IMG/VR virus record: IMGVR_UViG_3300023174_005338
Span: 124,001-188,000 of that record
Reading direction: 5' to 3' (one strand)
Length of the DNA stretch: 64,000 nt
In this document: positions 45,127-62,707 of the stretch, in pieces
How the letters are laid out: every line of letters starts with the position of its first letter
How positions within the stretch are numbered: position 1 is the first letter of the stretch
The notes under the pieces: generated by a model
What the model was told of the DNA's origin: nothing
Databases searched by the model: none
The model's input: the letters and a program-made list of their open reading frames with translations, nothing else
Translations under genes and position numbers: made by a program

Positions 45127-45348
45127 ATGGGCAAGCGTGAATATCGTCCCAATCCACGTGCATTACAAACACTAGAAGAGTTGAGCAACTTCCTGGAGTT
45201 CTGTCGAGACTATGGCTACAGATTCCGCGAGGAGGATCTTTACAACTTTAAAGCCTATGCCTGGCAACAGTACAACAAGTTCAGCCAAGGCAAAAACGCC
45301 AAGAACATGTGGGTGGAAGATGCCCGCAGACTGGGACGCAACATATGA
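45127..45348 (+). CDS. Hypothetical protein (73 aa)
   Basis: SD AAGGA, coupled to next gene. Confidence 0.65.
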   Translation: MGKREYRPNPRALQTLEELSNFLEFCRDYGYRFREEDLYNFKAYAWQQYNKFSQGKNAKNMWVEDARRLGRNI

Positions 45349-46550: not shown

Positions 46551-47494
46551 GAGTAGTAGTCACCGGCGGAGCCGGATACATCGGTGGGCAAACCGTACTC
46601 AAACTGTTGGATGCTGGTCACAGTGTGTTTGCCATTGATCGTGTATGGGCTCCAGATCATCTTGAACATTCGGGTGCCAAGTGGTTGATTGGCGATTTTG
46701 CTGGCGAGGTGGCATTGCAAGCCATTGAAACCTTCCAACCCGATGCAATCATACACTGTGCTGGTACCAGCCTGGTAGGACCCAGCATGACCAATCCTGC
46801 GGAATACTATGACAACAACTTTGTTCGTACAAAAATTCTTTGCGATTGGTTGGTCCAAAAAAAAATAAAAACTAGACTGATCTTCTCCAGCAGTGCCGCA
46901 ACCTATGGCAATCCCATAATGACACCAGTGCAAGAAGTAGATCCCACCGAGCCTATCAGTCCATATGGTCAAAGCAAGCTCATGGTAGATTGGTTGTTGG
47001 CCAGCTACAAACATGCATACGACCTTGATTACGTGAGTTTTAGATATTTCAACGCCTGCGGCGCAGACAGTCAAGCTCGCCACGGACAAGCAGTTGGGGC
47101 CACTCATATCATTGCTCGTGTGCTAGAAGCGGTAAAAAACAAACAAGACTTTACCTTGTACGGCACTGACTATGCCACCGATGATGGCACATGTGTAAGA
47201 GATTACATCCACGTGGAGGATTTGGCCACTGCGCATGTCATGGCCATTGATCCTTCTATACCCAGCGACATTTATAATCTTGGAACCAACCGGGGCACAA
47301 GCAATCTTGAAGTAATTCAGGCCGCGGCAAAAATCACCCAACAAGATGTGGGCGTGTTGCACGGTCCCAAGCGTGCAGGCGATCCTGCTGTATTGACCGC
47401 AGACTGCGGCAAATTCATTGCAGTCAGTGCCTGGCAACCAAAATTTGATCTCAACGACATGATAGCTCATGCCTGGGCCTGGTACACCAGATGA
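46547..47494 (+). CDS. galE: UDP-glucose 4-epimerase
   Basis: GGAGYIG, FSSSAATYG, YGQSK, RYFNACG, DGTCVRDYIHV. Confidence 0.9.
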   Translation: MRVVVTGGAGYIGGQTVLKLLDAGHSVFAIDRVWAPDHLEHSGAKWLIGDFAGEVALQAIETFQPDAIIHCAGTSLVGPSMTNPAEYYDNNFVRTKILCDWLVQKKIKTRLIFSSSAATYGNPIMTPVQEVDPTEPISPYGQSKLMVDWLLASYKHAYDLDYVSFRYFNACGADSQARHGQAVGATHIIARVLEAVKNKQDFTLYGTDYATDDGTCVRDYIHVEDLATAHVMAIDPSIPSDIYNLGTNRGTSNLEVIQAAAKITQQDVGVLHGPKRAGDPAVLTADCGKFIAVSAWQPKFDLNDMIAHAWAWYTR

Positions 47495-48126
47495 AAACCC
47501 TTAATGACTATACTGATGCATTTTTAGCAATCAAAGATTTTGAATCTGCGTTGGCTGATTTTACTGGAGCTCCATTTGCCATCACCACTGATTGTTGCAC
47601 GCATGCCATTGAAATTGCTTTTAGATTAGCACATGATAGTTCTGCAGTATCCTTTCCTGCCCGAACCTATCTCAGTGTGCCCATGACCATGCATAAACTA
47701 GGTATTAATTATGTTTTTGAAGATATCAAATGGAGAGAATGTTATCAATTCAAAGGATCACAAATATGGGATTGTGCAAGACTGTTCAAAGAAAACATGT
47801 ATCAAGCCGGAACCATACAGTGTTTGAGTTTTGGAAGAACCAAACCGTTACAAATTAGTCGTGGAGGTTGCATATTGACCAATGATCCAGAACTTTATCA
47901 ACGAGCAAGCCGTATGCGTTATGATGGGCGTGATATTTTTCAATTCAGCCTCGGAACCGAGCATAGTTGGGACGTGCAAAAAGATTTTGAAGTCGGATAT
48001 CATTATTATTTGAGGCCCGAAGATTGTGTAACAGGGTTAAATCTTTTAGAACAAAGAAATTTTGTTGAACAGGTTGAAAAACACTACAACTATCCAGATT
48101 GTAGAACTATAAACATTCGAAATTAA
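47491..48126 (+). CDS. Short DegT/DnrJ-family PLP aminotransferase
   Basis: DCCTHAI, WDCA, LSFGRTKPL...RGGCIL; lacks usual C-terminal domain. Confidence 0.65.
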   Translation: MKTLNDYTDAFLAIKDFESALADFTGAPFAITTDCCTHAIEIAFRLAHDSSAVSFPARTYLSVPMTMHKLGINYVFEDIKWRECYQFKGSQIWDCARLFKENMYQAGTIQCLSFGRTKPLQISRGGCILTNDPELYQRASRMRYDGRDIFQFSLGTEHSWDVQKDFEVGYHYYLRPEDCVTGLNLLEQRNFVEQVEKHYNYPDCRTINIRN

Positions 48127-48138
48127 ATCCATTTGATC

Positions 48139-48166
48139 TTGCAAAAATCTAAATATCGTGTATAAT
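48139..48166 (+). promoter_or_regulatory. Dual promoter (sigma70-like with TAAATA in spacer)
   Basis: TTGCAA-16 nt-TATAAT; TAAATA 48150-48155. Confidence 0.6.
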
Positions 48167-48177
48167 AAAAGGAAACC

Positions 48178-49017
48178 ATGACAACATTTACCAGTGAAGA
48201 CAGAGAGAACGCAGTGAAAAATAATGCCAGCCAAAAAACATTTGATGCCTTGCAACAAAGCCGTATTGTTGCCGAAGCACCATATCATCCAGGCTATGAA
48301 GATGCTGTAGTAGATCCCGACGAAGGCCGCCCACTGAGCGTGGTTATACGTGACAGCATGCGAGCTTCAGGTAAAAGATTCTGGGCTGGCGACAACATTA
48401 GTGAGTTTATCGAATCAGAGCGAGAACGCGAACAGCTGATTGACGAAGCCACACAAGCATTTGAAACTGTCTTGGACACCTTGTTGATTGATCGTGCGAC
48501 AGATCCCAACAGCCAAGGCACAGCAAGACGCTTGGCAAAAATGTATTTCAATGAAATCATGGCCGGCCGGTATGAACCCAGACCCGATGCCACAGCATTT
48601 CCCAACGATAGCGAGGACAGATATGAAGGAATGTTGGTTGTTAGAAGTGAATTGCGTAGTATGTGTAGTCATCACCATCAGCCTGTATCTGGGGTGGCTT
48701 ACATTGGTATCATTGCTGCCAACAAACTTATTGGCCTTAGCAAGTATACTCGTATTGCTCAGTGGTGCGCTAGGCGTGGTACTCTCCAGGAAGAGCTAGC
48801 CAACGACATTGCCAGAGAGATTGCCCGAGCCACTGACAGCGAAAACATTGGCGTTTATATCCAAGCCACACACGGTTGCTGTGAAAATCGTGGCATCATG
48901 GCACACAGTTCGTTGACTCAGACCACGGTGCTCAAAGGTGCGTTCAAAACTGATCCTGGCACCAAGAAAGAGTTCATGGATAATATCAAACTGCAACAAG
49001 AGTTTGCACCAAGATGA
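48178..49017 (+). CDS. folE: GTP cyclohydrolase I (N-terminally extended)
   Basis: SMCSHHHQP, GLSKYTRI, RRGTLQE, HGCCENRG. Confidence 0.92.
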   Translation: MTTFTSEDRENAVKNNASQKTFDALQQSRIVAEAPYHPGYEDAVVDPDEGRPLSVVIRDSMRASGKRFWAGDNISEFIESEREREQLIDEATQAFETVLDTLLIDRATDPNSQGTARRLAKMYFNEIMAGRYEPRPDATAFPNDSEDRYEGMLVVRSELRSMCSHHHQPVSGVAYIGIIAANKLIGLSKYTRIAQWCARRGTLQEELANDIAREIARATDSENIGVYIQATHGCCENRGIMAHSSLTQTTVLKGAFKTDPGTKKEFMDNIKLQQEFAPR

Positions 49018-49442
49018 TCCAGCCCTTGAGAGATGATCTCATGGTGCAACAACAGTTGCCCAACGGTTTAGAAGGTCGGGTGGCCGCTTGGCAACACATG
49101 GTGGCTGTAATCATGTTGAACCAGACTGGTCGTAAGCCTGTAAAAACTGTATTTCCCATCTTCATGCATTATTGGCCTAGTCCCAGCAAGTTTGTACGAG
49201 CAACAGAACAACAAGTTCGAGATGTGATATGGAGTCTAGGCATGGTCAATGTGCGGTATAAAAGATTGGTTGAAATGACCTACGACTTCATGCGCTGGGA
49301 TCTAGGTGATGCCACCAAGTTATATGGTATTGGCAAATACGGTTCGGACAGTTACGAAATGTTTTTCAAGAACAATTACCGAGTAGAACCCACAGACAAA
49401 GAGCTGATTCGCTATTTAGAACAAGAAGTTAGTGTATACTAA
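49014..49442 (+). CDS. MBD4-like HhH DNA glycosylase
   Basis: IMLNQT, LGMVNVR, LYGIGKYGSDSY (HhH plus catalytic Asp). Confidence 0.8.
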   Translation: MIQPLRDDLMVQQQLPNGLEGRVAAWQHMVAVIMLNQTGRKPVKTVFPIFMHYWPSPSKFVRATEQQVRDVIWSLGMVNVRYKRLVEMTYDFMRWDLGDATKLYGIGKYGSDSYEMFFKNNYRVEPTDKELIRYLEQEVSVY

Positions 49443-49448
49443 CCTGAG

Positions 49449-49477
49449 TTGACACAAAATACCCGTTTTGCTATAAT
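49449..49477 (+). promoter_or_regulatory. Consensus sigma70 promoter
   Basis: TTGACA-17 nt-TATAAT. Confidence 0.85.
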
Positions 49478-49507
49478 AGCAATATTATAAACTCTAATGG
49501 GTGTCAT

Positions 49508-51949
49508 ATGCGTCGCAAACTGCTGTGGACTTGTCTTTTTGGTACAGTTATTGTCGTCACTGGGTGTGGTGGAGGAGGTGGTGGAGGTGGTGGCTCTCCA
49601 TACAACAGTCCTAACCCTATACTTAGACAAGTTCCGTATTCCACTCCTGTACGAGTTGGATCAGTCACTCCCATAAACAGCACCGCACGAGAATATGACT
49701 CCAGTGCCATGTTTGCTGAAAATCTCAGTGGTACCGGTGAAGAATTAATCACAGCCGGCAGATCTAGTACCAGTAATCAAGGTTCCTATCCCACATCTAA
49801 TCTCAATGTGTTTGGTTGGAGCAACGGCACTTTGGTCAATCGAACCAGTCAGTGGTTCGCCGGCACAGACAACGTGATCTTAGGCACAGAACCCAGTGTT
49901 AAATTTGCTGACTTTGACGGTGATGGTCGCAAAGACATGTATGTGGCACCCAATACTGATGCCAGCTCAACCGGATCCGGGTGGGTATTTTTCAACAACG
50001 GTACCAGGTTTACCCGAGTAGATTTAAATCTCGGCATACATGGCCACGACAGTGCAGTTTATGATATCAACGGAGATGGTCGCAGTGATATTTTTACCAC
50101 TGGTAGTCGTGTGAGCTTTGGCAATGCTGATCGAACTTTCACCACACACGCAGTTTCAGGCGCAAATTATGGCGGCACCGCAGGATCAGTGGCCATAGCA
50201 GACTTCATGGGCACTGGTGGCAGCAGCATCATACTTACTGATCAAAATGCCTGGCAGACAGGAAATAATCGCTTGTATAGTTGGAGCATGGTCGACGGTG
50301 GTAGATCTACACTGGATTTTCGACTGACCATGATCAGTGCCCTGCCGGATTCGAGATTTCTCCTGCCCAAGTGGAGTGGGCATGGATTTGCTGGCAGCCA
50401 CGACTATAGAGCCCTGGCATTTGACTTTGACAATTCAGGTCTGCCCAGTGCTGTGATATTCAGTCGACCCCTTAAAGCCAACGGCACCGGCGGATACACC
50501 TGGCCCGACTACAGTGAAATACAGTTCTTGAAAAACCGCGGTGGTGGCACTTTTGTAGATGTCACTGACTCGACCTTGGTTGGGTATAACACAAACACAT
50601 CTTCACAACACTACAATCCCAAACTCATGGACGTGAACAACGATGGTCTTATTGACATTGTGTTGGGCGGAACCAGTTGGACCAGTGCCACTGGAGCCCA
50701 GGTCTTGATACACACCAAAGAACACAAATACGTGGCCAGTTATAGCACAGTGCTCGACGCTTTTCTTGGTCAGTCGTTGAACTTGGAAAAAGCCATAAAT
50801 GCCAGTGCAGAAACAGGCGCCAATGGCGTTGTTTTTGTGCGTGGGCCAGATGGCAACATGTATCTGGCCACCGCGGTCAGTTATGTCAGTGGCGGTGTGC
50901 AACAAAAAGCCATTTATCTCAGCAAGCTGGGCTCCACGGTTACCAATGCCCAGGCCACTGCCGCGGCAATCAAACAGGCTTGGCCCTGGATGAGTGACGG
51001 CCAGATCAACACAGTGCTGGCACAGAGCTCGACCACATGGTTTGGCATGAATGTGTTGGACCCAGAAAAAGCATTTCAACCAATCGGCAACTTGGGCATA
51101 CCGCTTGCCACCGGTGGCATAGCACCCATACGTGGTTACATCACAGGCCTGAACATTGGTGACGGGTCAGCTGTGGTCACTGACAGCTTGGGTCGTGCAT
51201 TCTCTACCAACATTAAACCCATGAATATCACTGCCATGAATGCGTTTGGATACAATACCGAACACAATGATCAGTATGAACTGACCAGCCATGCCGAATA
51301 TCTAGTCAATGGTACCTTGACCACTGTGGGCAATCTACGCTTTGGCAGTGATTTTGCCGGTAGAGACAACACCGGCCAGGGTCTTAACCGACCTCGACAA
51401 TACACCGTGGGTGTGCCAAGATGGTACAGCAAGGGAAACTGGAGTGCAGGCACACAATATACCTATCTAAATTCCAACCCGTGGATGGCTTTTGGTGGTG
51501 CCTGGGGTGAGATCACCGGAAGTGGCGTCATGGACAATGTGATCACATATCGCCGCGATGGATTCTCAGCACAGGCCAGTGCCATGCATGTGACAACCAA
51601 CATAACTCCGGGTCTGATCACTCGAGTCAACAACATGTGGGGTGCCTGGGCAGAATCCGGATATAGATTTGGTGATGCCAAAAGGTCCGGTGACATGGGC
51701 ATATATGCTGGCATCAAACCTGTGGTATTATCAGGATCAGTTGAAGCCCGAATACCCACAGCCGTTGACATGTCAGGTAATGTAGTATATACTAACAAGA
51801 AGTTAATGGTGCAAAATCAAACCACTGGTTATTTACGAACACTATATACTAATCAATTGGACCGTCGAACTCAGTTGAGACTGAGTGCTGTGAGCACTAC
51901 CGCAGGACAGTATCGGGCCATGACCGAACTTAAATTTTGGATAGACTAA
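49508..51949 (+). CDS. Lipoprotein with FG-GAP/VCBS repeats and probable C-terminal beta-barrel
   Basis: VTG|C lipobox, Gly9 linker, ADFDGDGRKD, DINGDGRSD, DVNNDGLID; amphipathic strands, ends ELKFWID. Confidence 0.7.
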   Translation: MRRKLLWTCLFGTVIVVTGCGGGGGGGGGSPYNSPNPILRQVPYSTPVRVGSVTPINSTAREYDSSAMFAENLSGTGEELITAGRSSTSNQGSYPTSNLNVFGWSNGTLVNRTSQWFAGTDNVILGTEPSVKFADFDGDGRKDMYVAPNTDASSTGSGWVFFNNGTRFTRVDLNLGIHGHDSAVYDINGDGRSDIFTTGSRVSFGNADRTFTTHAVSGANYGGTAGSVAIADFMGTGGSSIILTDQNAWQTGNNRLYSWSMVDGGRSTLDFRLTMISALPDSRFLLPKWSGHGFAGSHDYRALAFDFDNSGLPSAVIFSRPLKANGTGGYTWPDYSEIQFLKNRGGGTFVDVTDSTLVGYNTNTSSQHYNPKLMDVNNDGLIDIVLGGTSWTSATGAQVLIHTKEHKYVASYSTVLDAFLGQSLNLEKAINASAETGANGVVFVRGPDGNMYLATAVSYVSGGVQQKAIYLSKLGSTVTNAQATAAAIKQAWPWMSDGQINTVLAQSSTTWFGMNVLDPEKAFQPIGNLGIPLATGGIAPIRGYITGLNIGDGSAVVTDSLGRAFSTNIKPMNITAMNAFGYNTEHNDQYELTSHAEYLVNGTLTTVGNLRFGSDFAGRDNTGQGLNRPRQYTVGVPRWYSKGNWSAGTQYTYLNSNPWMAFGGAWGEITGSGVMDNVITYRRDGFSAQASAMHVTTNITPGLITRVNNMWGAWAESGYRFGDAKRSGDMGIYAGIKPVVLSGSVEARIPTAVDMSGNVVYTNKKLMVQNQTTGYLRTLYTNQLDRRTQLRLSAVSTTAGQYRAMTELKFWID

Positions 51950-51950
51950 C

Positions 51951-52319
51951 ATGACACTTGTAGAAGCTCAACAAGCTGGAATAGCACCATGGGACAATGA
52001 AATAGACAACCGTAATCGAGTGGTTGTTTACCTAGACCGGTATCCCTGCACGCCCGGACATAGATTGTATGTGCCCAAAGACAATGACAATCCCAACTGG
52101 GTAGTAAGAGCCTTTGAGGAGGCCCTGGCCGATGGTACCCACATGGTAGCATCTGGTGAGTGCGATGGGTTTAACATTGGTTACAACAGCGGCGAGGCAG
52201 CCGGACAAACTGTCATGTATCCACACATACATCTTATTCCACGTCGAGTCGGAGATGTAGCAGATCCAGTGGGCGGTGTGCGTAACACCATACCCGGCAA
52301 AGGAAATTATCGCAAATGA
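51951..52319 (+). CDS. HIT-family nucleotide hydrolase
   Basis: YPCTPGHRLYVP, NSGEAAGQTVMYPHIHLIPR. Confidence 0.85.
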   Translation: MTLVEAQQAGIAPWDNEIDNRNRVVVYLDRYPCTPGHRLYVPKDNDNPNWVVRAFEEALADGTHMVASGECDGFNIGYNSGEAAGQTVMYPHIHLIPRRVGDVADPVGGVRNTIPGKGNYRK

Positions 52320-52332
52320 AAGAAAACAGTCA

Positions 52333-53259
52333 ATGACTCTCCCACTACAACCAAATTTGCTGGGGTTACCTCTGGCTCCTGCTCAGTGTGTGATAGATCC
52401 GGCTCTCAAACAACAAGTGTATTCAATCATTGACAGCTCCAGTGATTATCTGGACAGTGATAGTGTGCTGTCTGATTTTCTGAGCACGTATATTCACTGG
52501 ATCAAACAAAGTCAGTTGAATTGTATCACCGGCATTGATAGTTTTGATCAAGTTGATTATTCTCAAGGTACAACAGAATCATTTGATCACTTTTATATTA
52601 AAAATTCTCAAAGAAGATTTCGTTGTTTTCGCGGAGAATATCTGTATCATCAATTGGTTTGGAAGAGCAGTTTTCCAAACTGGAAATTCATAGAAGACGA
52701 GCCGTTGATGTCAAACGATGCTGTAGTTTTAAGTGTGCCGTTTGCTGATACTGGAAACGTGCATGCTGGCATAGACAAAACCTTTCTGGACCAGTGTGCC
52801 TACTTGAAAATTCCAGTGCTGGTAGACATGGCTTTTTTTGGTATCTGTGGAAACATCGATTTTGATTTGGCACACCCGGCAATTTCAGATGTTTGTTTTA
52901 GTTTGAGCAAAACATTTCCTGTTAGCCTTTTACGAATTGGAATGAGACTGTCCCGAGGTAATCAGCAGGACGGGCTTGCTGTTTACAATCAAACACAATA
53001 TGTGAATCGTGCGGGAGCAGGCATAGGATTAAAATTGTTAAAAATACTTTCTGCTGATTGCACTTACTTGCGTTACAGAGACAAGCAAGAGTCATGGTGT
53101 CAACAACATGAACTAGCAACCAGTGACACAGTGATTTTTGGATTGGATTTTGCTCACAAATATGACCGGTACAACCGAGGCAGTGCAGACAGCAATAGAA
53201 TTTGTTTTGCCAGTATGTATCAATATGATTCTTGGCCACAGGCAGTCAAGATTGATTAA
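52333..53259 (+). CDS. Fold-type I PLP-dependent enzyme
   Basis: VLVDMAF, FSLSKTF..LRIG. Confidence 0.65.
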   Translation: MTLPLQPNLLGLPLAPAQCVIDPALKQQVYSIIDSSSDYLDSDSVLSDFLSTYIHWIKQSQLNCITGIDSFDQVDYSQGTTESFDHFYIKNSQRRFRCFRGEYLYHQLVWKSSFPNWKFIEDEPLMSNDAVVLSVPFADTGNVHAGIDKTFLDQCAYLKIPVLVDMAFFGICGNIDFDLAHPAISDVCFSLSKTFPVSLLRIGMRLSRGNQQDGLAVYNQTQYVNRAGAGIGLKLLKILSADCTYLRYRDKQESWCQQHELATSDTVIFGLDFAHKYDRYNRGSADSNRICFASMYQYDSWPQAVKID

Positions 53260-54076
53260 GGCCGGACACGACGACTGGCTTGGTCTCACATTGGATCCTG
53301 GTCAATTTTGTGTGGAAATACTCAAACCTGCTACCGTGGTCAAGTCAAATTTTCATCATGAAGCTGATCGCGCGATTAGATATCTGGCAGATAGATACTG
53401 TGATCGTCCTTTGTATTTGGCACTCAGTGGTGGCATCGACAGTGAGTTTGTTGCCAATCTCTTGCTGAAAAATTCCATACCTTTTAGACCAATCATCTTA
53501 AAAATTGATTCATTCAACAGCCCGGAATCATGGTATGCCGAGTATTGGTGCAAGCAACATGATATTGATCCCATAAGACTGAGTCTCACAACTGATCAAT
53601 ACATCCAGGAAATGAAAAAATACTATCCGTACTTGCTAAAATTACAGAATGCACTTCAAACACCAATGATGTATTTGTATGATTATGTAAATCAGCTCAA
53701 TGGTTATTGTATCTATTCTGCCGGAGACATCAATCTAGATTTAGAAGAAAAAAAATTTTATTGTTACAGTTTGGATTTTATCAGCGATTTACTGAACAAT
53801 GGACACCCCACCAGCTTTTTTATGTACACTCCGGAATTGGCATTGAGCTACGTCTCTGAATTTGATGTTAACATTACGGAACAAGAAAACAAATTAAATT
53901 TTTATAATGTATCGCCTAGACCAAAAATTGATTACATATCTTCTTTACATAGTTGTTCCACGGTGGCAGAGGTTATTGATAAGTTTTGTTACATCTCAAA
54001 ACAACAAATAGCGCCTTACCCGTATTGGTATGGAAAAAAAGAAGAATTGATAAAAAAACTTGTTGGGTCAAACTAA
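53225..54076 (+). CDS. PP-loop (adenine nucleotide alpha hydrolase-like) protein
   Basis: LALSGGIDSE; start uncertain. Confidence 0.6.
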   Translation: MILGHRQSRLIKAGHDDWLGLTLDPGQFCVEILKPATVVKSNFHHEADRAIRYLADRYCDRPLYLALSGGIDSEFVANLLLKNSIPFRPIILKIDSFNSPESWYAEYWCKQHDIDPIRLSLTTDQYIQEMKKYYPYLLKLQNALQTPMMYLYDYVNQLNGYCIYSAGDINLDLEEKKFYCYSLDFISDLLNNGHPTSFFMYTPELALSYVSEFDVNITEQENKLNFYNVSPRPKIDYISSLHSCSTVAEVIDKFCYISKQQIAPYPYWYGKKEELIKKLVGSN

Positions 54077-54082
54077 TGTCAA

Positions 54083-54167
54083 TAAGTATTATCCACAGCG
54101 GTCTTGGCGTCACTCCCGCTTTACAAACTCTGCCGCCTATGCTATAATCTAACATAGGAGAACTACA
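54083..54167 (+). ncRNA. Candidate riboswitch-like pseudoknot / SD-sequestering leader of queD
   Basis: P1 AGCGG/CCGCT, loop GGCG vs CGCC, A-rich linker, CCTATG/CATAGG over the SD. Confidence 0.4.
54120..54148 (+). promoter_or_regulatory. sigma70-like promoter
   Basis: TTTACA-17 nt-TATAAT. Confidence 0.6.
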
Positions 54168-54617
54168 ATGGCAAAGTATCTTTCAACCAAGCACTACGGA
54201 CACAACATTGGGTTGAGTGCTGTATTCCGTCAACCCAATGCTGACCACAGTCACTGTCACTTGCTACATGGTTACAGCCTGGCATTCACATTCACTTTTG
54301 GTTGCGATCAGTTAGATGATAAAAACTGGGCAGTGGACTTTGGTGGACTCAAAGAACTAAAAGCCTGGCTAGAAGATCATTTTGATCACAAGCTGGCCCT
54401 GGATCGTGCAGATCCGCACTTGGACAAGTTTCAAGAACTAGAAACATTGGGTTTAGCTGAGATCAGAATGTTTGATGGGGTAGGCGCTGAAAAGTTTGCC
54501 GAACATGCATTCAATTTTGCAGATCTCTTAATCCGCGAAAAGACCAATGGTCGTTGCTTTTGCGTCAGGGTAGAATGTGCTGAACACGGTGCCAACAGTG
54601 CCATCTACGAAGGATAA
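54168..54617 (+). CDS. queD: 6-carboxy-5,6,7,8-tetrahydropterin synthase
   Basis: HCHLLHGY (CxxxHG), VDFGGLK, FDHKL, EKFA, VECAE. Confidence 0.85.
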   Translation: MAKYLSTKHYGHNIGLSAVFRQPNADHSHCHLLHGYSLAFTFTFGCDQLDDKNWAVDFGGLKELKAWLEDHFDHKLALDRADPHLDKFQELETLGLAEIRMFDGVGAEKFAEHAFNFADLLIREKTNGRCFCVRVECAEHGANSAIYEG

Positions 54618-54659
54618 GATTTGTTGGCACCGTAAACGGCGTATATAAATATTCGCACT

Positions 54660-55481
54660 ATGGCAAACGACTATAAAATAGCAATATTACTTCCCACACG
54701 AGGCCGCACCGACGCCTTGACACGCAGTCTAATTGGCCTGTTAGAAAAAGCCACAGATCTAGATTCCATACAAGTGTTGTTGGGCTTGGACACAGATGAC
54801 ACTGTAGGCATCCAGCACTTCCAAGAAGAACTACAACCTAAATTAGACGACATGGGTGTGGATTATACTGCCATGTCTTTTGAGCCCATAGGCTACAGCC
54901 AATTGCATGATTATGTAAACACCCTGGCGCGAGCCAGTTCGGCAGATTGGATGTTTTTCTGGAACGACGATGCTGTCATGGACAGTGAAGCCTGGGATAC
55001 GGAAATTTGCAAGTACACTGGTGAATTTAAATTACTAGCAGTTCATACTCACAATGACCATCCCTACAGTATATTTCCCATAGTGCCCAGAGCCTGGCTG
55101 GATGTGATTGGACATCTCAGTTTGCACAGCATGAACGATGCCTGGCTGAGTCAAAATGCTTACTGTGTGGACATATTTGAGCGAATCAATGTGCATGTCA
55201 CGCATGATCGAGCTGACCTTACTGGCAATAATTTAGATGCCACTTACAAACAACGCGAACTCTTGGAAGGTAATCCCAGCAACCCCAAAGACTTTCATCA
55301 TCCAGAACAGACCTCAAAACGCATGCGTGAGTGTGACAAATTGAATGATTATTTGAAAACCATAGGGCAGAATCCTACCTGGTGGGATGCCGTCAAAACT
55401 CAACAGCAAGATCCCTGGCAACGGCTGAGAGAAAACGACGTCAATAATCAAATGCGTCAATTCCAAATAAAAATGAAATGA
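54660..55481 (+). CDS. GT2-like glycosyltransferase
   Basis: ILLPTRGR, LDTDD, FFWNDD; TATAAATA 54644-54651. Confidence 0.75.
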   Translation: MANDYKIAILLPTRGRTDALTRSLIGLLEKATDLDSIQVLLGLDTDDTVGIQHFQEELQPKLDDMGVDYTAMSFEPIGYSQLHDYVNTLARASSADWMFFWNDDAVMDSEAWDTEICKYTGEFKLLAVHTHNDHPYSIFPIVPRAWLDVIGHLSLHSMNDAWLSQNAYCVDIFERINVHVTHDRADLTGNNLDATYKQRELLEGNPSNPKDFHHPEQTSKRMRECDKLNDYLKTIGQNPTWWDAVKTQQQDPWQRLRENDVNNQMRQFQIKMK

Positions 55482-56428
55482 AAAAAATTGTATATGTCAC
55501 AGGTTGTTTGGGATTCATAGGAGTACACGTCACACGACAATGTCTGGCACGTGGATGGCATGTGATTGGTGTGGACAAAGGTACCTATGCCAGCAATTTT
55601 GATTTCTTAGATGAATTTCAAAAATACGATACATTTAAATTCATACACCGAGATATCAATGACCTTGACCGGTTGTATGATTGCGATTATATCATAAACA
55701 CGGCTGCTGAAACTCATGTAGACAACTCAATCATGAGTTCCGAGATATTCCTGCACAGCAACATCAACGGTGTACACCGTCTGTTAGAACTGATCCGCCA
55801 ACAACCTGTTCAAAAGCAACCAATATTGTTGCATTTTTCAACCGACGAGGTCTATGGAGATATTGATTCGGGCGCACATACCGAAACCGATCTGTTAAAA
55901 CCCAGCAATCCTTATTCAGCATCAAAGGCAGCTGCCGACATGTTGATCCTGGCCTGGGCAAGAACATATGGCATCCGATATGTGATCGTGCGTCCTACCA
56001 ACAATTATGGCATTGGTCAATATGTTGAAAAATTAATTCCCAAGTCGATCAAATATCTCAAAATAGGCAGGAAAATTGACCTGCATGATCGTGGTGAGCC
56101 GCGGAGGACTTGGTTGCATGTCGAAGACACTGCTCGTGCGGCCATGACCGTGATTGATCACGGCAAAGTCAACGAAATCTACAACATTTCAGGCAATGCG
56201 GAAATGCCCAACAAGGAAGTTATCAAGAAGATTTTGCAACACTATCCCGGCAGCGGTGCTGAAGATCGTTGGGAAGATTATATAATTGGCAGTCATCGAC
56301 AAGGCCAAGATGTGCGTTATGCAATCGATGACTCCAAACTCAAAGCCCTGGGATGGCGACCCGTGGCCAACTTTGATCAAGAATTACAAAGAGTTATAGA
56401 GTACTATATGTTAAATTTTATTTGGTGA
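55478..56428 (+). CDS. rmlB: NDP-glucose 4,6-dehydratase (RmlB/RfbB-like)
   Basis: AAETHVDNSI, STDEVYG, NPYSASKA, NNYG, LIPK, RxGQDVRYAID. Confidence 0.85.
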   Translation: MKKIVYVTGCLGFIGVHVTRQCLARGWHVIGVDKGTYASNFDFLDEFQKYDTFKFIHRDINDLDRLYDCDYIINTAAETHVDNSIMSSEIFLHSNINGVHRLLELIRQQPVQKQPILLHFSTDEVYGDIDSGAHTETDLLKPSNPYSASKAAADMLILAWARTYGIRYVIVRPTNNYGIGQYVEKLIPKSIKYLKIGRKIDLHDRGEPRRTWLHVEDTARAAMTVIDHGKVNEIYNISGNAEMPNKEVIKKILQHYPGSGAEDRWEDYIIGSHRQGQDVRYAIDDSKLKALGWRPVANFDQELQRVIEYYMLNFIW

Positions 56429-56431
56429 TCC

Positions 56432-57130
56432 ATGGGAACATATTATAAAGCAGTAGCACAATTTATGGATGCAGTTGATCCCTCTGGTGCCTGGGTTGAG
56501 ATCGGAGTTGACCGTGGCGAAGGCAGCACCAAATTCTTTGCTGACATAGCAAAAACAAAAGGCATTAAGTTTTATGGTGTTGATGCCGATGAAAATCAAA
56601 TTGCTCGAGCTAGAACAGTGTTATCAGCACAAGGACAAGCAATATTAGGAGCCGACGGTCAATTTCGATTGGCCGAAGGACCTTTGCCGGATCACATAGA
56701 ATTAGTGCATGCCTTTGGTGAAAATTTTCTAGAGCAATTCACACGCGACAATCCAGGAAAGAAATTTTCGTTGGTGTACCTTGACAACTTTGACTGGGAC
56801 TACTGGGTTGGCGGTCAAGAAGAATCTTTTGTCCCAGCACAAAAGCAACACTATAGAGATTACATGGGCACCGAAATGACCAACATCAACAGCCAAAAAA
56901 CTCATCTGTTGCAGGCCATGCGACTAATGCCATTGATGACTGAAAACAGTATCATAGTATGTGATGACACCTGGTATCATCCCAACGAAGGAGTGTTCAT
57001 TGGCAAGTGTTCCGCAGTAATTCCTTACTTGTTGTTACAAGGATATGAAGTATTAAACAGCCAAGGCTACAGACAAAACAGTGGTGCTATTTTGGGCAGA
57101 TTTACTAAACGCACAGATTCAGAGAGTTGA
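56432..57130 (+). CDS. SAM-dependent methyltransferase (paralog 1)
   Basis: VEIGVDRGEGS, YLDNFDWD, CDDTW. Confidence 0.7.
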   Translation: MGTYYKAVAQFMDAVDPSGAWVEIGVDRGEGSTKFFADIAKTKGIKFYGVDADENQIARARTVLSAQGQAILGADGQFRLAEGPLPDHIELVHAFGENFLEQFTRDNPGKKFSLVYLDNFDWDYWVGGQEESFVPAQKQHYRDYMGTEMTNINSQKTHLLQAMRLMPLMTENSIIVCDDTWYHPNEGVFIGKCSAVIPYLLLQGYEVLNSQGYRQNSGAILGRFTKRTDSES

Positions 57131-57133
57131 TCA

Positions 57134-57754
57134 ATGGGCACATACTATCGAAATGTAGAAAAATTTATACCTCAAATTGATCCAGGTGTGTGGATTGAAA
57201 TTGGTGTTGATCGCGGCGAGGGCAGTACCAAGTTCTTTGCTGATCTAGCAAAAATACATGCCACAAGATTTTATGCTGTAGACTATGATCAAGATCAAAT
57301 CACCGGGCTCAAAGAAAGATTTGTAGAATTACCCGAGCATGTTCGAGCCATACAAGCCAAGGGCGAAGACTTCTTGGACAACTTTAGAAACCTGGAACCC
57401 ACTGCTCAAGTGAGTTTGGTGTACTTAGACAACTTTGACTGGGACTACTGGGTCAACCGAAAAGCCAAACCTTTTGTGCCAGCTCAAAAAGAACGCTACC
57501 TACAAAAAATGGGAACCGAAATGACCAATCTAAATAGTCAACAAGCTCATTTGAAACAGGCTATCCGGTTAATGCCATTGATGTGCAATAATAGCATTAT
57601 TGTGTGTGACGATACTTGGTACGAACCCGATGAAGGAGTGTTCATTGGCAAGTGTTCCGCGGCTATTCCTTATTTGTTATCCGAAGGTTATCGGCTGTTA
57701 CATAGTGAAGGGCATCGTCACAACAGCGGTGCTATATTAGGCAGATCGAAATGA
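57134..57754 (+). CDS. SAM-dependent methyltransferase (paralog 2)
   Basis: Same motifs as upstream gene. Confidence 0.7.
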   Translation: MGTYYRNVEKFIPQIDPGVWIEIGVDRGEGSTKFFADLAKIHATRFYAVDYDQDQITGLKERFVELPEHVRAIQAKGEDFLDNFRNLEPTAQVSLVYLDNFDWDYWVNRKAKPFVPAQKERYLQKMGTEMTNLNSQQAHLKQAIRLMPLMCNNSIIVCDDTWYEPDEGVFIGKCSAAIPYLLSEGYRLLHSEGHRHNSGAILGRSK

Positions 57755-58485
57755 CAGTTAAAAATTATCTAGTATCAGCTGTGCGGCCAATTCGCAACGG
57801 CTGGCACCTGGAAAACAATCAAGACCTGTACAAGGCCTACGGAGAAATGTACCAAATGAGATTGGCATCATTCCGTAAATTTTGTCAAGAACCATTTGAA
57901 GCTGTGTTATGGACTGAACCTACCAACGACAGTGATACCTATACCGTAGACAACTGGAAAGAAATCAAAACGTTGTGGCACAAAGAACCCTGCAACGTTT
58001 TCTGGGCCGGAGCTGACACATTCATGATTCGACCTACCAGTTTGTTCGGCGATCGCTACCAAGAATACAGATTGTTCAACTACACTGAGCCCAGAAACCA
58101 TAGAGAATTTCGACATCATTTCAATGATGATGTACAATACTATCCGCATACCATGTCACGAGAAATATGGGAGTTAGGCGAGAAATACTGGGCGCAAAGA
58201 GAAACACATCCAGATCGCTTGTGGGGATTTGATCAACTAAGACACAACGCAATGTTTTGGACTCAAGATATTCCTGAGGATGATCGATTACATCCAGAAA
58301 TGAATTACATGTGTCATAACTTAAGAAGCGACAGCCCAGCTGAACTAGAATCTACTAGACTCTGGAATTCTGGAGTGCCATTCGCTGACGCAAACATTTT
58401 GCATTTTTGTGCCAGCCGAGGCAGCCGTCAAGTGGTCAATATGATGAAAGTATTATGTCAAGAACTTGGAGTCACCTATGAATGA
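57751..58485 (+). CDS. Probable nucleotide-diphospho-sugar transferase
   Basis: FWAGADTF (DxD variant), ILHF; sugar-gene context. Confidence 0.45.
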   Translation: MTVKNYLVSAVRPIRNGWHLENNQDLYKAYGEMYQMRLASFRKFCQEPFEAVLWTEPTNDSDTYTVDNWKEIKTLWHKEPCNVFWAGADTFMIRPTSLFGDRYQEYRLFNYTEPRNHREFRHHFNDDVQYYPHTMSREIWELGEKYWAQRETHPDRLWGFDQLRHNAMFWTQDIPEDDRLHPEMNYMCHNLRSDSPAELESTRLWNSGVPFADANILHFCASRGSRQVVNMMKVLCQELGVTYE

Positions 58486-59797
58486 AATTTTAACATTGAT
58501 CAAACAGTATATTGAACAAAAACAATCTGCCAAGACCTGGGTAGCCGGCAAGGACTTTGTCAACTATGCAGGTCCGCATTTCAACTCCGACGAGTACGTG
58601 GCAGCCGCAGAAGCCTTGCTGAATGGCTGGCTGGTCATGGGCAACAAGAGCCTGCGCTTTGAACAAAAGTTTCCCAAGGAATTTGGCAAGACACGCGGAG
58701 TGTTGACCAACAGTGGTAGTTCAGCCAACTTGCTGATGATGACAGCAATGAAGAGCAAGCGCGGACACAACTTTCCACCTGGCACCAAAGTATTGATGCC
58801 CATTGCTGGATTCCCAACCACACTTAATCCAACCTTGCAAAATCAATTTACACCAGTGTTCTGCGACATTGAAATTGATACCTTGAACATTGATCTAGAT
58901 CACGCAGAACAGATACTTGCCGGTGATCCAGACATTAAAATTATAACCTTTGCACATGTGTTGGGTAACCCGCCCAACATGGACCGTGTGATGGAATTAG
59001 TTAATAAACACAATCTAATCCTGTTAGAAGATTGTTGCGATGGATTGGGAACAACTTACGATGGCAAGCCTTTGGGAAGTTTTGGTGAGATGGCATCATG
59101 CAGTTTTTATCCAGCACACCACATGACCATGGGCGAAGGCGGCTTTGTGGCCATGAATGATCCACAGCAAGAAATCATCGTGCGTAGCCTACGTGAATGG
59201 GGACGTGGATGTTATTGTGTAGGGCCCGAGGCCAACAAATTAAAATGTGGCACCTGTGGCAAGCGATTCAATGAGTGGATTCCTGAAATGCCAGATCAGA
59301 TTTTTGATCACAAGTATGTGTATGATGAAATTGGGTATAACTTAAAACCTATTGAACTACAAGCAGCCATGGGCCTTGAACAACTTAAAAAATTGCCAGA
59401 AATCCATGAGCTACGTCAACGCAACTACAATCTGTTGTTTGCTATCTATGAAAAATATGAACAATTCTTCCACTTGCCACGTGCTAGAGACAAAGCCGAT
59501 GTCAGTTGGTTTGCGTTCCCATTGACTATTCGTGCAGATGCTCCGTTCTCACGCATGGATATCGTTGACTATCTTGAAGAAAACTTGATACAGACCCGTC
59601 CATACTTTGCTGGCAACATCATGTTGCAACCTGCGTATAGTCACTTGATGGATCCTGTGGCAGCACGTGACAATTATCCTGTGGCCACATTTACCATGAA
59701 GAATACTTACTTCCATGGATGTAGTCCGGTTATTACACCCGAGCAGATTGCTTACATTGGAGAGAAGGTCGATGGATTTATGAGTTTATACCTATGA
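58478..59797 (+). CDS. rfbH: CDP-4-keto-6-deoxyglucose 3-dehydrase (RfbH/DdhC, E1)
   Basis: SFYPAHHMTMGEGG (His replaces Schiff-base Lys), GRGCYC...CGTC Fe-S Cys, DHKYVYDEIGYNLKP. Confidence 0.9.
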   Translation: MNEILTLIKQYIEQKQSAKTWVAGKDFVNYAGPHFNSDEYVAAAEALLNGWLVMGNKSLRFEQKFPKEFGKTRGVLTNSGSSANLLMMTAMKSKRGHNFPPGTKVLMPIAGFPTTLNPTLQNQFTPVFCDIEIDTLNIDLDHAEQILAGDPDIKIITFAHVLGNPPNMDRVMELVNKHNLILLEDCCDGLGTTYDGKPLGSFGEMASCSFYPAHHMTMGEGGFVAMNDPQQEIIVRSLREWGRGCYCVGPEANKLKCGTCGKRFNEWIPEMPDQIFDHKYVYDEIGYNLKPIELQAAMGLEQLKKLPEIHELRQRNYNLLFAIYEKYEQFFHLPRARDKADVSWFAFPLTIRADAPFSRMDIVDYLEENLIQTRPYFAGNIMLQPAYSHLMDPVAARDNYPVATFTMKNTYFHGCSPVITPEQIAYIGEKVDGFMSLYL

Positions 59798-60960
59798 AAA
59801 GTTTAAGCCAAGTAACCTCCAAAATTGATGGTCAGCCAATGTTCAAGTACCTGGACATGGCCAAGTCTTTGGAGGCCCGAGGCCAACATCTTATTCACAT
59901 GGAGATAGGTGAGCCAGACTTTGACACACCCAAAAATGTCACTTGGGCCGCTGTGCAATCTTTGTCCAACGGAGAAACACACTACGGTAGTAGTTTTGGC
60001 CTACAAGAATTTAGAGAAGCTGTGCAGTTTGCCACAGAACGCAGCCGAGGATTTCGTCCAGATCTAGATCAAGTGTTGATCACTCCGGGTGCCAACATTG
60101 CCATCTACTATGCTGTGTTCTGTTTGGTTGATCCCGGTTTTGAAGTCATTGTTCCAGACCCTGGATTCAGCACATATTACAGCAACATCAAAATGTGTGG
60201 TGCTGTTCCTGTTCGAGTGCCACTCAAAGAAGAAAACGAATTCCGTATGAGCCCGGATGATATCGAAGCGGCCATCACAGACAAGACACGTTTGATCATT
60301 ATCAACAGTCCGCAAAATCCCACAGGCAGTGTGCTTACCACTGACGAAGTCAAACGCATTTATGAAATTGCCAAGAAGCATGACATATACATTTACAGTG
60401 ATGAGATTTATGCACGCATGAACTATGAGCCAATCGGCTTTGCAAGTCCCAGCATTTACGATCATTGCAAAGAACATGTTATCCTCAGCAATGGTTTCAG
60501 TAAAGCATTTGCCATGACAGGCTGGAGATTGGGCACACTGATCGGACCGGCCAATGTCATTGAACGCATGGCGGCATTGTTACAAACCACGTCAAGTTGT
60601 GTCAGTGCGTTTGTTCAGCGTGCCGGCATTGAAGCAATTCGCGGCAGCCAAGAAACAGTCACAAACATGATGGCAGAATATCAGGCACGCAGAGACCTGC
60701 TGGTCGACGGACTCAATCGTGTCAAGGGTTTTAAATGTCTCCGGCCAGGCGGTGCATTTTATGTGTTTCCTAATATCACAGAAACAGGGTTATCAAGTGA
60801 CCAAGTTGTTGAAAAGTTAATGTCTGCTGGAGTAGTAACATTGCCTGGACATTGTTTTGGAAAACATGGTGAGGGCTATATTAGATTGTGTTATGCAACC
60901 AGTCGTGAAAACATTCAAGAAGGTCTGAATAGAATTTACAAAGCATTGGGAACAAAATGA
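59794..60960 (+). CDS. Class I/II PLP aminotransferase (AspAT-like)
   Basis: IGEPDF, NSPQNPTG, SDEIY, GFSKAFAMTGWRLG. Confidence 0.9.
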   Translation: MKSLSQVTSKIDGQPMFKYLDMAKSLEARGQHLIHMEIGEPDFDTPKNVTWAAVQSLSNGETHYGSSFGLQEFREAVQFATERSRGFRPDLDQVLITPGANIAIYYAVFCLVDPGFEVIVPDPGFSTYYSNIKMCGAVPVRVPLKEENEFRMSPDDIEAAITDKTRLIIINSPQNPTGSVLTTDEVKRIYEIAKKHDIYIYSDEIYARMNYEPIGFASPSIYDHCKEHVILSNGFSKAFAMTGWRLGTLIGPANVIERMAALLQTTSSCVSAFVQRAGIEAIRGSQETVTNMMAEYQARRDLLVDGLNRVKGFKCLRPGGAFYVFPNITETGLSSDQVVEKLMSAGVVTLPGHCFGKHGEGYIRLCYATSRENIQEGLNRIYKALGTK

Positions 60961-62701: not shown

Positions 62702-62707
62702 AACACC

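What the first reader, a model, noticed from the sequence alone, without database searches (positions are those of the whole stretch)
54083..54167. preQ1-I-like pseudoknot with an SD-sequestering stem upstream of queD
AGCGG-UCUUGGCGUCACUC-CCGCU-UUACAAACUCUGC-CGCC: a 5-bp P1 (54097-101/54116-120), a loop starting with U and ending with C, an A-rich L3, and P2 GGCG (54106-09) with CGCC (54134-37). This parallels the class I preQ1 aptamer as I recall it (AGAGG-UUCUAGCUACAC-CCUCU-AUAAAAAA-CUAA) but with longer loops. P2 overlaps a competing stem CCUAUG (54136-41)/CAUAGG (54153-58) that hides the SD AGGAG, giving two exclusive states. A TAAGTA late-type motif (54083) would transcribe the whole element, while the internal sigma70 promoter (54120-48) would bypass it. 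The gene context fits a deazapurine or guanine-nucleotide sensor; pseudoknot formation would turn translation ON. It is a candidate variant riboswitch in a phage.
Basis: partly seen in the sequence, partly recalled or inferred. Interest (0 to 1): 0.75.

Follow-up and report, generated by a model that had tools for sequence, protein, structure and literature searches.

The report
Conserved pseudoknot switch before phage queD
The 90 bases in front of a 7-deazaguanine-pathway gene (queD-like) of a 337-kb T4-like freshwater phage fold into a pseudoknot that is kept by compensating mutations in hundreds of related phages. It competes with a helix that hides the ribosome-binding site, so it looks like a new, phage-only riboswitch candidate that turns translation on.

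Summary
On this one sequence they are not beyond chance (fold z = 0.13; 12.6% of shuffles give a similar pseudoknot). Comparison settles it. Every QueD-like locus with upstream DNA, in two protein subfamilies, carries the element, giving 111 distinct aptamers. P1 is paired in 99.7% of cells and P2 in 80-86%. Slid controls give 29-47% overall. Ten or eleven of 13 pairs change on both sides.

After a U.C mismatch it continues with C54111-G54132 and A54112-U54131. The latter switches A-U to G-C with no exception.

The whole 3' strand of P2 (54131-54137) also pairs with the SD and start codon. Other leader subtypes keep an equivalent anti-RBS helix. The pseudoknot should therefore free the RBS, which makes this an ON switch.

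Predicted promoters end 7-9 nt before P1. No Rfam family matches, preQ1-I/II/III included. The element occurs once in the genome, always heads a queD-like operon, and was found in no cultured phage checked.

The genome has FolE, QueD-like, QueE-like and a phosphoribosyltransferase, but no TGT/DpdA.

The ligand is unknown and binding is untested.

The parts
54083..54088 (+). TAAGTA, a T4-late-promoter-like motif ending 8 nt before P1
   Evidence: TAA[AG]TA ends 3-12 nt before P1 in 63 of 125 distinct leaders, with a peak at 7-9 nt. It is present in 52 of 67 leaders of this subtype. ATAAATA is the most enriched 7-mer upstream of ORFs in this genome, 17-fold. The genome is T4-like by gp23 and gp20.
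54097..54101 (+). P1, 5' strand (AGCGG)
   Evidence: Paired in 99.7% of cells. Six fully complementary variants occur across 111 aptamers.
54102..54105 (+). L1 (UCUU). The family consensus is N-C-U-N plus 0-5 nt.
   Evidence: C at position 2 and U at position 3 in all 111 distinct aptamers.
54106..54112 (+). P2, 5' strand (GGCG, then U, then CA)
   Evidence: Six variable pairs all change on both sides. C54111-G54132 is invariant. A54112-U54131 is A-U in 112 rows and G-C in 8 rows, never unpaired.
54113..54115 (+). L2 (CUC). C54115, directly 5' of the P1 3' strand, is invariant.
   Evidence: The last base is C in 111 of 111 aptamers. It is preceded by U in 90, A in 11 and C in 10.
54116..54120 (+). 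P1, 3' strand (CCGCU)
54121..54130 (+). L3 (UUACAAACUC). The family consensus is WUAYAAAYUC.
   Evidence: L3 plus the UGC that follows it (the 13-nt segment) is 13 nt in 108 of 111 aptamers. Position 4 of L3 tracks the central P1 pair: C or U with C-G, A with A-U or U-A.
54131..54137 (+). P2, 3' strand (UG, C, CGCC). The same bases are the anti-RBS strand of the alternative fold.
   Evidence: for P2. The MFE fold pairs 54131-54135 with 54169-54173, and 54136-54141 with 54153-54158.
54136..54158 (+). SD-sequestering hairpin (CCUAUG / CAUAGG) with an 11-nt loop that carries TATAAT
   Evidence: The stem is kept in 67 leaders of this subtype, and the loop keeps TAnnnT in 61 of 67.
54120..54148 (+). 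Sigma-70-like promoter embedded in the element (-35 at 54120-54125, TG at 54140-54141, -10 at 54143-54148)
   Evidence: Function not tested.
54156..54160 (+). Shine-Dalgarno AGGAG
54168..54173 (+). Start codon plus GCA. Bases 54169-54173 pair with 54131-54135 in the alternative fold.
   Evidence: AUGGCAAA is kept even across the two QueD-like subfamilies when they share a leader subtype.
54168..54617 (+). QueD-like (PTPS fold) gene, 149 aa
   Evidence: Pfam PF01242 E = 8e-14. phrog_2389 E = 4e-40. Below the NCBIfam QueD cut-off. Homologues up to 54% identical lie in 7-deazaguanine clusters of cultured phages.

Best explanation
The leader of the queD-like mRNA is a cis-acting, two-state translational switch built on an H-type pseudoknot.

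**State 1, the pseudoknot.** P1 (5 bp) and P2 (4 bp, a U.C mismatch, then 2 bp) form. A 2-3 nt junction ends in an invariant C, and an A-rich 10-nt L3 lies along P1.

**State 2, RBS hidden.** The 3' strand of P2 instead pairs with the start codon region and opens a hairpin over the SD.

**Direction of the switch.** On secondary-structure energies alone state 2 is the more stable. Something must therefore stabilise the pseudoknot to free the RBS. The most likely agent is a small molecule bound at the P1/P2 junction, as in preQ1-I. A guanine-faced heterocycle of the pterin or 7-deazapurine pathway is the best guess. That makes it a translational ON riboswitch. It would act on transcripts that start at a phage promoter ending 7-9 nt before P1.

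**What is shown and what is inferred.**
- Shown: conservation and covariation of P1, P2 and, more weakly, the anti-RBS helix; exclusive linkage to queD-like operons.
- Inferred: the two states exclude each other in vivo; the direction is ON; a ligand exists and what it is.

**My separate confidences.**
- Conserved functional RNA pseudoknot: 0.95.
- Two-state control of translation: 0.75.
- Small-molecule riboswitch: 0.55.
For: 1. The element is found at every locus that could be checked. All 77 loci of the 149-aa subfamily with enough upstream DNA have it. So do 82 of 84 sources searched for the 165-aa subfamily; the other two have no upstream DNA.
2. Covariation, 13-pair structure:
   - A2 set: 91.5% of cells paired against 31-47% in slid controls; score 0.438 against at most 0.115; 11 of 13 pairs change on both sides.
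   - A3 set, which is independent: 87.7% against 29-47%; score 0.318 against at most 0.087.
   - No shuffle out of 500 reached the observed score in either set.
3. G.U pairs occur in P2, so the structure is RNA of the + strand.
4. A54112-U54131 changes to G-C in 8 distinct rows with no exception.
5. L3 position 4 tracks the central P1 pair, as expected if L3 docks on P1.
6. About 20 unpaired positions are nearly invariant.
7. A helix between the P2 3' strand and the SD or AUG is predicted at -8 kcal/mol or better in 111 of 125 distinct leaders.
8. In the start-codon-hairpin subtype this helix is 89% paired against 20-54% in slid controls. Non-coding positions change in a compensating way: AUUG/CAAU, AUCUU/AAGAU, AUUAUUA/UAAUAAU.
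9. Duplex energies are -5.7 +/- 1.5 kcal/mol for P2 and -9.6 +/- 1.8 for the anti-RBS helix.
10. Late-type or sigma-70-type promoter motifs end 7-9 nt before P1.
11. There is a single copy in the 337-kb genome.
12. In a gene-independent pattern scan, 76 of 80 matches are followed directly by a QueD-like ORF. The other 4 have one extra coupled ORF and then QueD-like.
13. Contigs from RNA libraries cover 54096-54162.
Against: - No ligand binding and no transcript 5' end has been measured. The RNA-library contigs could be carried-over DNA, and they extend upstream of P1.
- This single sequence has no thermodynamic signal.
- The anti-RBS helix is partly fixed by the coding sequence, so its covariation is thin: 2 pairs and 4 cells.
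- An ON switch is unusual in front of a biosynthetic gene.
- In this leader subtype a good sigma-70-like promoter lies inside the element. Its transcripts would lack the aptamer.
- The sequences are related to one another, so the shuffle controls overstate significance. The slid controls are the fairer comparison.
Confidence: 0.6

Rival explanations
1. It is an ordinary, divergent member of the preQ1-I riboswitch class. It would bind preQ1 or preQ0 and repress queD when the end product is abundant.
For: - It has a 5-bp P1 with an invariant G-C pair on top.
- An invariant C, preceded by U or A, sits directly before the P1 3' strand.
- L3 is A-rich and it lies upstream of a queD-like gene.
- These features are the ones listed for preQ1-I in PMC11625349.
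Against: - No match to RF00522, RF01054 or RF02680, either at gathering or at E <= 10 on three leader subtypes.
- L1 is N-C-U-N, not UU.
- P2 has 6-9 pairs plus a mismatch, against 3-4 in preQ1-I.
- The 3' strand of P2 is complementary to the RBS rather than containing it, so the logic is inverted.
Confidence: 0.12
2. It is a protein-binding translational operator. A phage protein, possibly the QueD-like enzyme itself or a RegA-like repressor, recognises the pseudoknot, as gp32 does with the pseudoknot in the T4 gene 32 leader.
For: - The phage is T4-like.
- Conserved loops can be protein contacts as well as ligand contacts.
- The first codons travel together with the leader.
Against: - The element occurs once per genome, so it is not the site of a global regulator.
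- It sits in front of two QueD-like subfamilies that looked only roughly 45% identical by eye, and sometimes in front of an unrelated first ORF.
- The compact junction with an invariant C is aptamer-like.
- The one attempt to model a protein-RNA complex was not folded by the tool and gives no evidence either way.
Confidence: 0.15
3. It is a ligand-independent structure. The pseudoknot and the RBS helix would set a fixed or temperature-dependent translation rate, or a kinetic folding delay, without sensing a metabolite.
For: Both helices are supported, but nothing shows a ligand. Some leaders have weak P2 helices carrying A.C or U.U mismatches.
Against: About 20 invariant unpaired bases in a 45-nt RNA are more than a simple tuning hairpin needs. 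P2 is weaker than its competitor, so on its own it would rarely form.
Confidence: 0.12
4. The conservation is at the DNA level. The stretch would be a promoter or operator (TTTACA-17-TATAAT), and the RNA pairings would be incidental.
For: The promoter match is strong, with a TG extension. TAnnnT is kept in 61 of 67 leaders of this subtype.
Against: - Leader subtypes with no internal promoter keep the same P1 and P2.
- Compensating changes, G.U pairs and a pseudoknot are not properties of a promoter.
- The promoter can coexist with the RNA element, but it cannot replace it.
Confidence: 0.02

Closest known systems
preQ1-I riboswitch (Rfam RF00522; types I-III)
   Same: - H-type pseudoknot with a 5-bp P1 capped by a G-C pair.
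- A cytosine preceded by U or A directly 5' of the P1 3' strand.
- An A-rich L3 that appears to dock on P1.
- Located before genes of the 7-deazaguanine pathway.
- A switch that works through RBS accessibility.
   Different: - No covariance-model match.
- L1 is N-C-U-N plus 0-5 nt.
- P2 is two to three times longer, with a conserved U.C mismatch and a conserved CA/UG extension.
- L3 is 10 nt.
- The 3' strand of P2 is an anti-RBS, so the predicted response is ON instead of OFF.
- Found only in uncultured T4-like freshwater phages.
Translational ON riboswitches such as the add adenine riboswitch
   Same: Aptamer formation withdraws a strand that otherwise pairs with the SD or start codon.
   Different: A different fold (three-way junction), a different ligand and cellular hosts.
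Pseudoknot in the T4 gene 32 leader
   Same: An H-type pseudoknot in the 5' leader of a T4-like phage mRNA that takes part in translational control.
   Different: The gene 32 pseudoknot is a nucleation site for its own protein. It has no competing anti-RBS helix of this kind and no aptamer-like invariant junction.
freshwater-2 RNA motif (Rfam RF02980)
   Same: It comes from metagenomes, and its Rfam consensus ends in an SD and an AUG. It was the only cis-regulatory family to appear at all, on one relative.
   Different: The score is 13.8 bits against a cut-off of 49.9, with E = 4.3. The model's helices were laid on a promoter-region hairpin and on P2, not on the real architecture. There was no hit on the window.

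Membership tests
preQ1-I riboswitch (RF00522) | Scores with the family covariance model | tested here: not met
   No hit at gathering in the window or in 20 related loci. No hit at E <= 10 on the leaders of the window, L004 or L012.
preQ1-I riboswitch (RF00522) | H-type pseudoknot: the hairpin loop pairs with the 3' tail; P1 is about 5 bp | tested here: met
preQ1-I riboswitch (RF00522) | Specificity cytosine directly 5' of the P1 3' strand, preceded by U (type I) or A (types II and III), as described in PMC11625349 | tested here: met
   C in 111 of 111 aptamers; preceded by U in 90, A in 11 and C in 10. Its role in ligand pairing is untested.
preQ1-I riboswitch (RF00522) | UU directly on top of the P1 5' strand (types I and III) | tested here: not met
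   Here it is N-C-U-N, with C and U invariant at positions 2 and 3.
preQ1-I riboswitch (RF00522) | A-rich L3 in the minor groove of P1 | tested here: inconclusive
   L3 is WUAYAAAYUC, and its position 4 tracks the central P1 pair. The three-dimensional contact cannot be tested here.
preQ1-I riboswitch (RF00522) | The 3' strand of P2 contains SD bases, so ligand binding represses | tested here: not met
   The 3' strand of P2 is complementary to the SD or start region.
preQ1-I riboswitch (RF00522) | Binds preQ1 or preQ0 | not testable with these tools
   Needs in-line probing or ITC.
preQ1-II (RF01054) and preQ1-III (RF02680) | Scores with the family covariance model | tested here: not met
Riboswitch (general) | A conserved aptamer with covarying helices and invariant junction bases, in a 5' leader, linked to one gene family | tested here: met
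Riboswitch (general) | An expression platform that excludes the aptamer fold | tested here: met
   The P2 3' strand is shared with the anti-RBS helix in all subtypes. The duplex is -8 kcal/mol or better in 111 of 125 leaders. Covariation is modest.
Riboswitch (general) | Direct, selective binding of a small molecule that changes expression | not testable with these tools
freshwater-2 RNA (RF02980) | Scores with the family covariance model | tested here: not met
   13.8 bits against 49.9 on L012 only. No match on the window.
T4-type late promoter (TATAAATA) | Consensus octamer about 6-8 nt upstream of the transcript start | tested here: inconclusive
   The window has AATAAGTA, which departs from the consensus. 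Relatives have ATAAATA at the same distance, and the motif is enriched 17-fold upstream of ORFs. No TSS data.

The most novel reading that the evidence does not exclude
This is a new riboswitch class confined to T4-like freshwater phages. It would sense an intermediate or precursor of the phage's own pterin or 7-deazapurine pathway, for example dihydroneopterin triphosphate, CDG, or a 7-deazaguanine base or nucleotide. It would switch queD translation ON in late transcripts. An embedded host-type promoter would give an unregulated early transcript. That would make it a virus-specific metabolite sensor with no cellular counterpart. It may be an evolutionary offshoot of preQ1-I with inverted logic.
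Probability: 0.45. Interest if true: 0.85.

Novelty: new variant of a known kind. Interest (0 to 1): 0.78.

Why it matters
- Riboswitches encoded by phages are few, and none is known, as far as I am aware, that controls phage 7-deazaguanine synthesis.
- This element is small (about 45 nt) and abundant: at least 600 loci in each of two QueD-like subfamilies in IMG/VR. Its covariation is clean, and both alternative folds can be read from the sequences.
- It is therefore directly testable in vitro.
- It could show what signal a jumbo phage monitors while it makes modified-base precursors.
- It would give a compact ON-type aptamer for a guanine-like ligand.
- It offers a case of how a preQ1-I-like fold may be rebuilt with opposite logic.

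Tried and rejected
1. **Rfam.** I ran the whole window and 20 related loci at gathering, and three leader subtypes at E <= 10. Nothing relevant appeared. The only near-miss was freshwater-2 at 13.8 bits.
2. **Single-sequence thermodynamics and chance.** Neither gives a signal.
3. **Terminator reading of P1.** No U-run follows P1, and the terminator scan finds nothing there.
4. **Nucleotide search of cultured phages.** No match. A protein search finds QueD-like genes that are at most 54% identical. In the three I inspected they are packed in operons without a leader, and the model finds nothing there.
5. **Scan of 185,579 species genomes.** Twelve of 16 hits are chance matches inside GC-rich genes. 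The 4 real ones lie on contigs of Bacteroidota MAGs (Haliscomenobacter, Chitinophagales), in front of QueD-like ORFs with the same phage-type neighbouring genes in the two contigs examined. They are probably binned phage DNA.
6. **Second copy in the genome.** None.
7. **Transcript ends from public runs.** Only assembled contigs were available. They show presence in RNA libraries but no 5' end.
8. **Protein-RNA complex prediction** for the autoregulation rival. The tool did not fold it, so it gives no evidence.
9. **QueC reading of the weak PF06508 hit** outside the window. It is NadE.
10. **Literature.** No description of this motif was found in the held library. Absence there is not proof of novelty.

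Full report
**Setting.** The window is bases 124001-188000 of a 337,119-bp IMG/VR virus record with direct terminal repeats. The virus is T4-like: it has a gp23 capsid protein (E = 1e-97) and a gp20 portal (E = 5e-106).

The finding lies in the 91-nt gap between two genes. The upstream gene is an Asn-synthase-like PP-loop ORF (53138-54076). The downstream gene is a 149-aa PTPS-fold ORF (54168-54617). That ORF matches Pfam PF01242 (E = 8e-14) and phrog_2389 'QueD-like' (E = 4e-40). It scores below the NCBIfam QueD cut-off.

**Observation.** On this sequence alone, none of it stands out:
- The MFE z-score is 0.13.
- 12.6% of dinucleotide shuffles of the intergenic region contain a 5-bp plus 4-bp H-type arrangement.

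- All 77 of the 80 kept loci that have enough upstream DNA carry the same element.
- A second QueD-like subfamily of 165 aa was found through a genome scan. It gave another 595 or more loci. The covariance model R1, built from the first set, hit 82 of the 84 sources searched. The two misses have no upstream DNA.
- Together these give 111 distinct aptamers.

**Structure.** P1 is paired in 99.7% of cells. It occurs as AGCGG/CCGCU (69), AGAGG/CCUCU (13), ACCGG/CCGGU (11), UGCGG/CCGCA (7), AGUGG/CCACU (5) and AGUCG/CGACU (1).

P2, the pseudoknot helix, has 49 different 5' strands and 20 different 3' strands. G.U pairs occur in it, which places the structure in RNA of the + strand.

| Set | Cells paired | Slid controls | Covariation score | Slid score | Pairs changed on both sides | Shuffles reaching the score |
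|---|---|---|---|---|---|---|
| A2 | 91.5% | 31-47% | 0.438 | at most 0.115 | 11 of 13 | 0 of 500 |
| A3 (independent) | 87.7% | 29-47% | 0.318 | at most 0.087 | 10 of 13 | 0 of 500 |

These figures are for the full 13-pair structure. Searches give the 11-pair version.

Two details were new.
- The conserved UCA after the P2 5' strand and the conserved UCUGC before its 3' strand are not loop sequence. After a U.C mismatch, C pairs with G and A pairs with U. The A-U pair is replaced by G-C in eight distinct rows and is never broken.
- L3 position 4 is C or U when the central P1 pair is C-G, and A when that pair is A-U or U-A. This is what docking of L3 on P1 would give. Shared ancestry could contribute.

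The resulting anatomy in the window is:
- P1: 54097-54101 with 54116-54120
- L1: 54102-54105
- P2: 54106-54112 with 54131-54137
- L2: 54113-54115
- L3: 54121-54130

**The other fold.** Plain MFE folding of every leader gives P1 plus a second helix. In that helix the 3' strand of P2 pairs with the ribosome-binding region. In the window, 54131-54135 pair with 54169-54173, which includes the U and G of the start codon. Bases 54136-54141 pair with 54153-54158, which includes the first three bases of the SD.

Other subtypes reach the same end differently:
- One uses a direct hairpin over the start codon. Its non-coding part changes in a compensating way: AUUG/CAAU, AUUGUU/AACAAU, AUCUU/AAGAU, AUUAUUA/UAAUAAU.
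- Another uses a long imperfect hairpin. Its base is GUCAUC/GAUGGC and an inner CCUU/AAGG covers the SD.

A duplex of -8 kcal/mol or better is predicted in 111 of 125 distinct leaders. In the hairpin subtype the helix is 89% paired against 20-54% in slid controls, with two pairs changed on both sides. Much of this helix is fixed by the coding sequence, so that test is weaker than the ones for P1 and P2.

The two QueD-like subfamilies share AUGGCAAA at the start when they share a leader subtype. The first codons therefore behave as part of the element.

P2 alone is weaker than its competitor: -5.7 +/- 1.5 against -9.6 +/- 1.8 kcal/mol. The pseudoknot therefore needs extra stabilisation to win, and when it wins the RBS is free. 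This predicts an ON switch. That is an inference.

**Transcription.** In 125 distinct leaders, TAA[AG]TA ends 3-12 nt before P1 in 63, with a peak at 7-9 nt. A sigma-70-like -10 ends 7-8 nt before P1 in 17. The late-type motif goes with the window's subtype (52 of 67), and the sigma-70 type with the hairpin subtype. ATAAATA is the most enriched 7-mer upstream of ORFs in this genome, at 17-fold. Both promoter types would start the RNA at the foot of P1.

In the window's subtype the loop of the SD hairpin keeps TAnnnT in 61 of 67 leaders, with a -35-like hexamer 17 nt upstream. An embedded promoter that bypasses the switch is therefore plausible.

Public runs gave only contigs. RNA-library contigs of relatives match 54096-54162 exactly, but they extend upstream and could be DNA. 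In one lake DNA sample, depth rises from 330 to 899 over the leader. This shows that co-occurring phages share the leader while their flanking sequences differ.

**Distribution and linkage.**
- There is one copy in the genome.
- In a gene-independent pattern scan of IMG/VR, 76 of 80 matches are followed directly by a QueD-like ORF. In the other four, one extra ORF with overlapping stop and start lies in between (unknown, cupin, CmoB-like methyltransferase, unknown).
- Among 185,579 species genomes there are four real instances. All lie on contigs of Bacteroidota MAGs, and the two contigs examined have the phage gene order. This hints at the host.
- No cultured phage has a close QueD-like relative; the best is 54% identical. 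The three I inspected have no leader.

**Pathway context.**
- The genome encodes FolE (window 48178-49017).
- It encodes the QueD-like protein.
- It encodes a QueE-like radical-SAM protein just beyond the window (G000 189074-189940; 61% identical to the QueE-like ORF that follows QueD-like in L252).
- It encodes a phosphoribosyltransferase next to that QueE-like gene.
- No TGT/DpdA was found.
- A cultured T4-like cyanophage carries the same set of four genes (QueE, a purine phosphoribosyltransferase, QueD, FolE) in one cluster.
- Homologues of this QueD-like protein in cultured phages lie in annotated 7-deazaguanine clusters.

The gene under control is therefore part of a deazapurine route.

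**Comparison with known families.** The nearest known kind is preQ1-I. The shared and differing features are taken from the review PMC11625349.

Shared:
- A 5-bp P1 with a G-C pair on top.
- A cytosine preceded by U or A directly before the P1 3' strand.
- An A-rich L3.
- The queuosine-pathway context.

Different:
- No match to the family's covariance model, or to those of preQ1-II and preQ1-III.
- L1 is N-C-U-N rather than UU.
- P2 is much longer.
- P2 carries an anti-RBS rather than the SD.

I therefore do not file it as a member. It works like an H-type pseudoknot riboswitch, with opposite polarity.

**Verdict.**
- A real, strongly conserved cis-regulatory RNA: confidence 0.95.
- A two-state translational switch: 0.75.
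- A small-molecule ON riboswitch with a still unknown guanine-faced ligand: 0.55.
- It is absent from Rfam 15 and from the literature I could search.

Noticed in passing
window 48178-49017, 54168-54617; G000 188353-189940 (L303:780-2373): The phage has FolE, QueD-like, QueE-like and a phosphoribosyltransferase, but no TGT/DpdA by PF01702. This suggests a route to a 7-deazaguanine nucleotide through the free base rather than by base exchange in DNA. A cultured T4-like cyanophage (ON615601) carries the same four genes in one cluster.
   Followed up: partly
window 51951-54076 and 54660-55481; L100:1-4656; L089: A conserved module travels with the element: a HIT-family protein, an Asn-synthase-like PP-loop protein (possibly a QueC analogue), then the element, QueD-like, and a glycosyltransferase-like protein. 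Relatives add a 641-aa B12-binding radical-SAM protein after QueD-like, which the window lacks.
   Followed up: partly
window 45309-63382: There is a large island of sugar-nucleotide and glycan genes. It holds two NDP-sugar dehydratases or epimerases, DegT and class I/II aminotransferases, glycosyltransferases, and two tandem paralogous methyltransferases (56432-57130 and 57134-57754). It also holds an FkbM methyltransferase.
   Followed up: no
window 60957-62701: A TPP-dependent enzyme is split over two ORFs that overlap by 4 nt. The N-terminal and middle domains are in 60957-61964 and the C-terminal domain in 61961-62701. This could be a frameshift, a real two-subunit form or a sequencing error.
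   Followed up: no
window 47491-48126: A 211-aa ORF matches DegT/DnrJ in two stretches, the best covering only positions 26-95 of the 360-position aminotransferase model. It is possibly a truncated gene.
   Followed up: no
window 49014-49442: A small (142 aa) HhH-GPD-like ORF, related to base-excision glycosylases, lies directly after FolE. The match is just under the Pfam cut-off. It might act on nucleic-acid bases in the same pathway.
   Followed up: no
window 49508-51949: An 813-aa FG-GAP repeat protein has a lipoprotein-like N-terminus followed by a run of nine glycines. It has a sub-threshold match to the TcdB middle/N-terminal region (E = 4.5e-4, 20 bits against a 24.8-bit cut-off), which is probably a repeat resemblance. 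The ORF is intact.
   Followed up: no
whole genome G000: (A/G)TAAATA(T/C) is the only strongly enriched 7-mer family in the 15-80 nt upstream of SD-preceded ORFs (13-18-fold). It is probably this phage's late promoter.
   Followed up: partly
L117, L141, L144, L101 versus L004, L038: The 165-aa QueD-like subfamily starts with AUGGCAAAU when it carries the long-hairpin leader, and with AUGACA when it carries the window-type leader. The leader and the first codons seem to be exchanged as one module between the two protein subfamilies.
   Followed up: partly
L089, L095, L100, L101 (genome contigs): The only instances in 185,579 species genomes are on contigs binned into Haliscomenobacter, Chitinophagales and Bacteroidetes MAGs. 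One of those contigs is 183 kb long. They are probably phage contigs, and they may point to Bacteroidota hosts.
   Followed up: partly
window 52276-53259 and 53138-54076: The two ORFs upstream of the element overlap by about 120 nt as listed. The true start of the PP-loop gene is probably further downstream.
   Followed up: no
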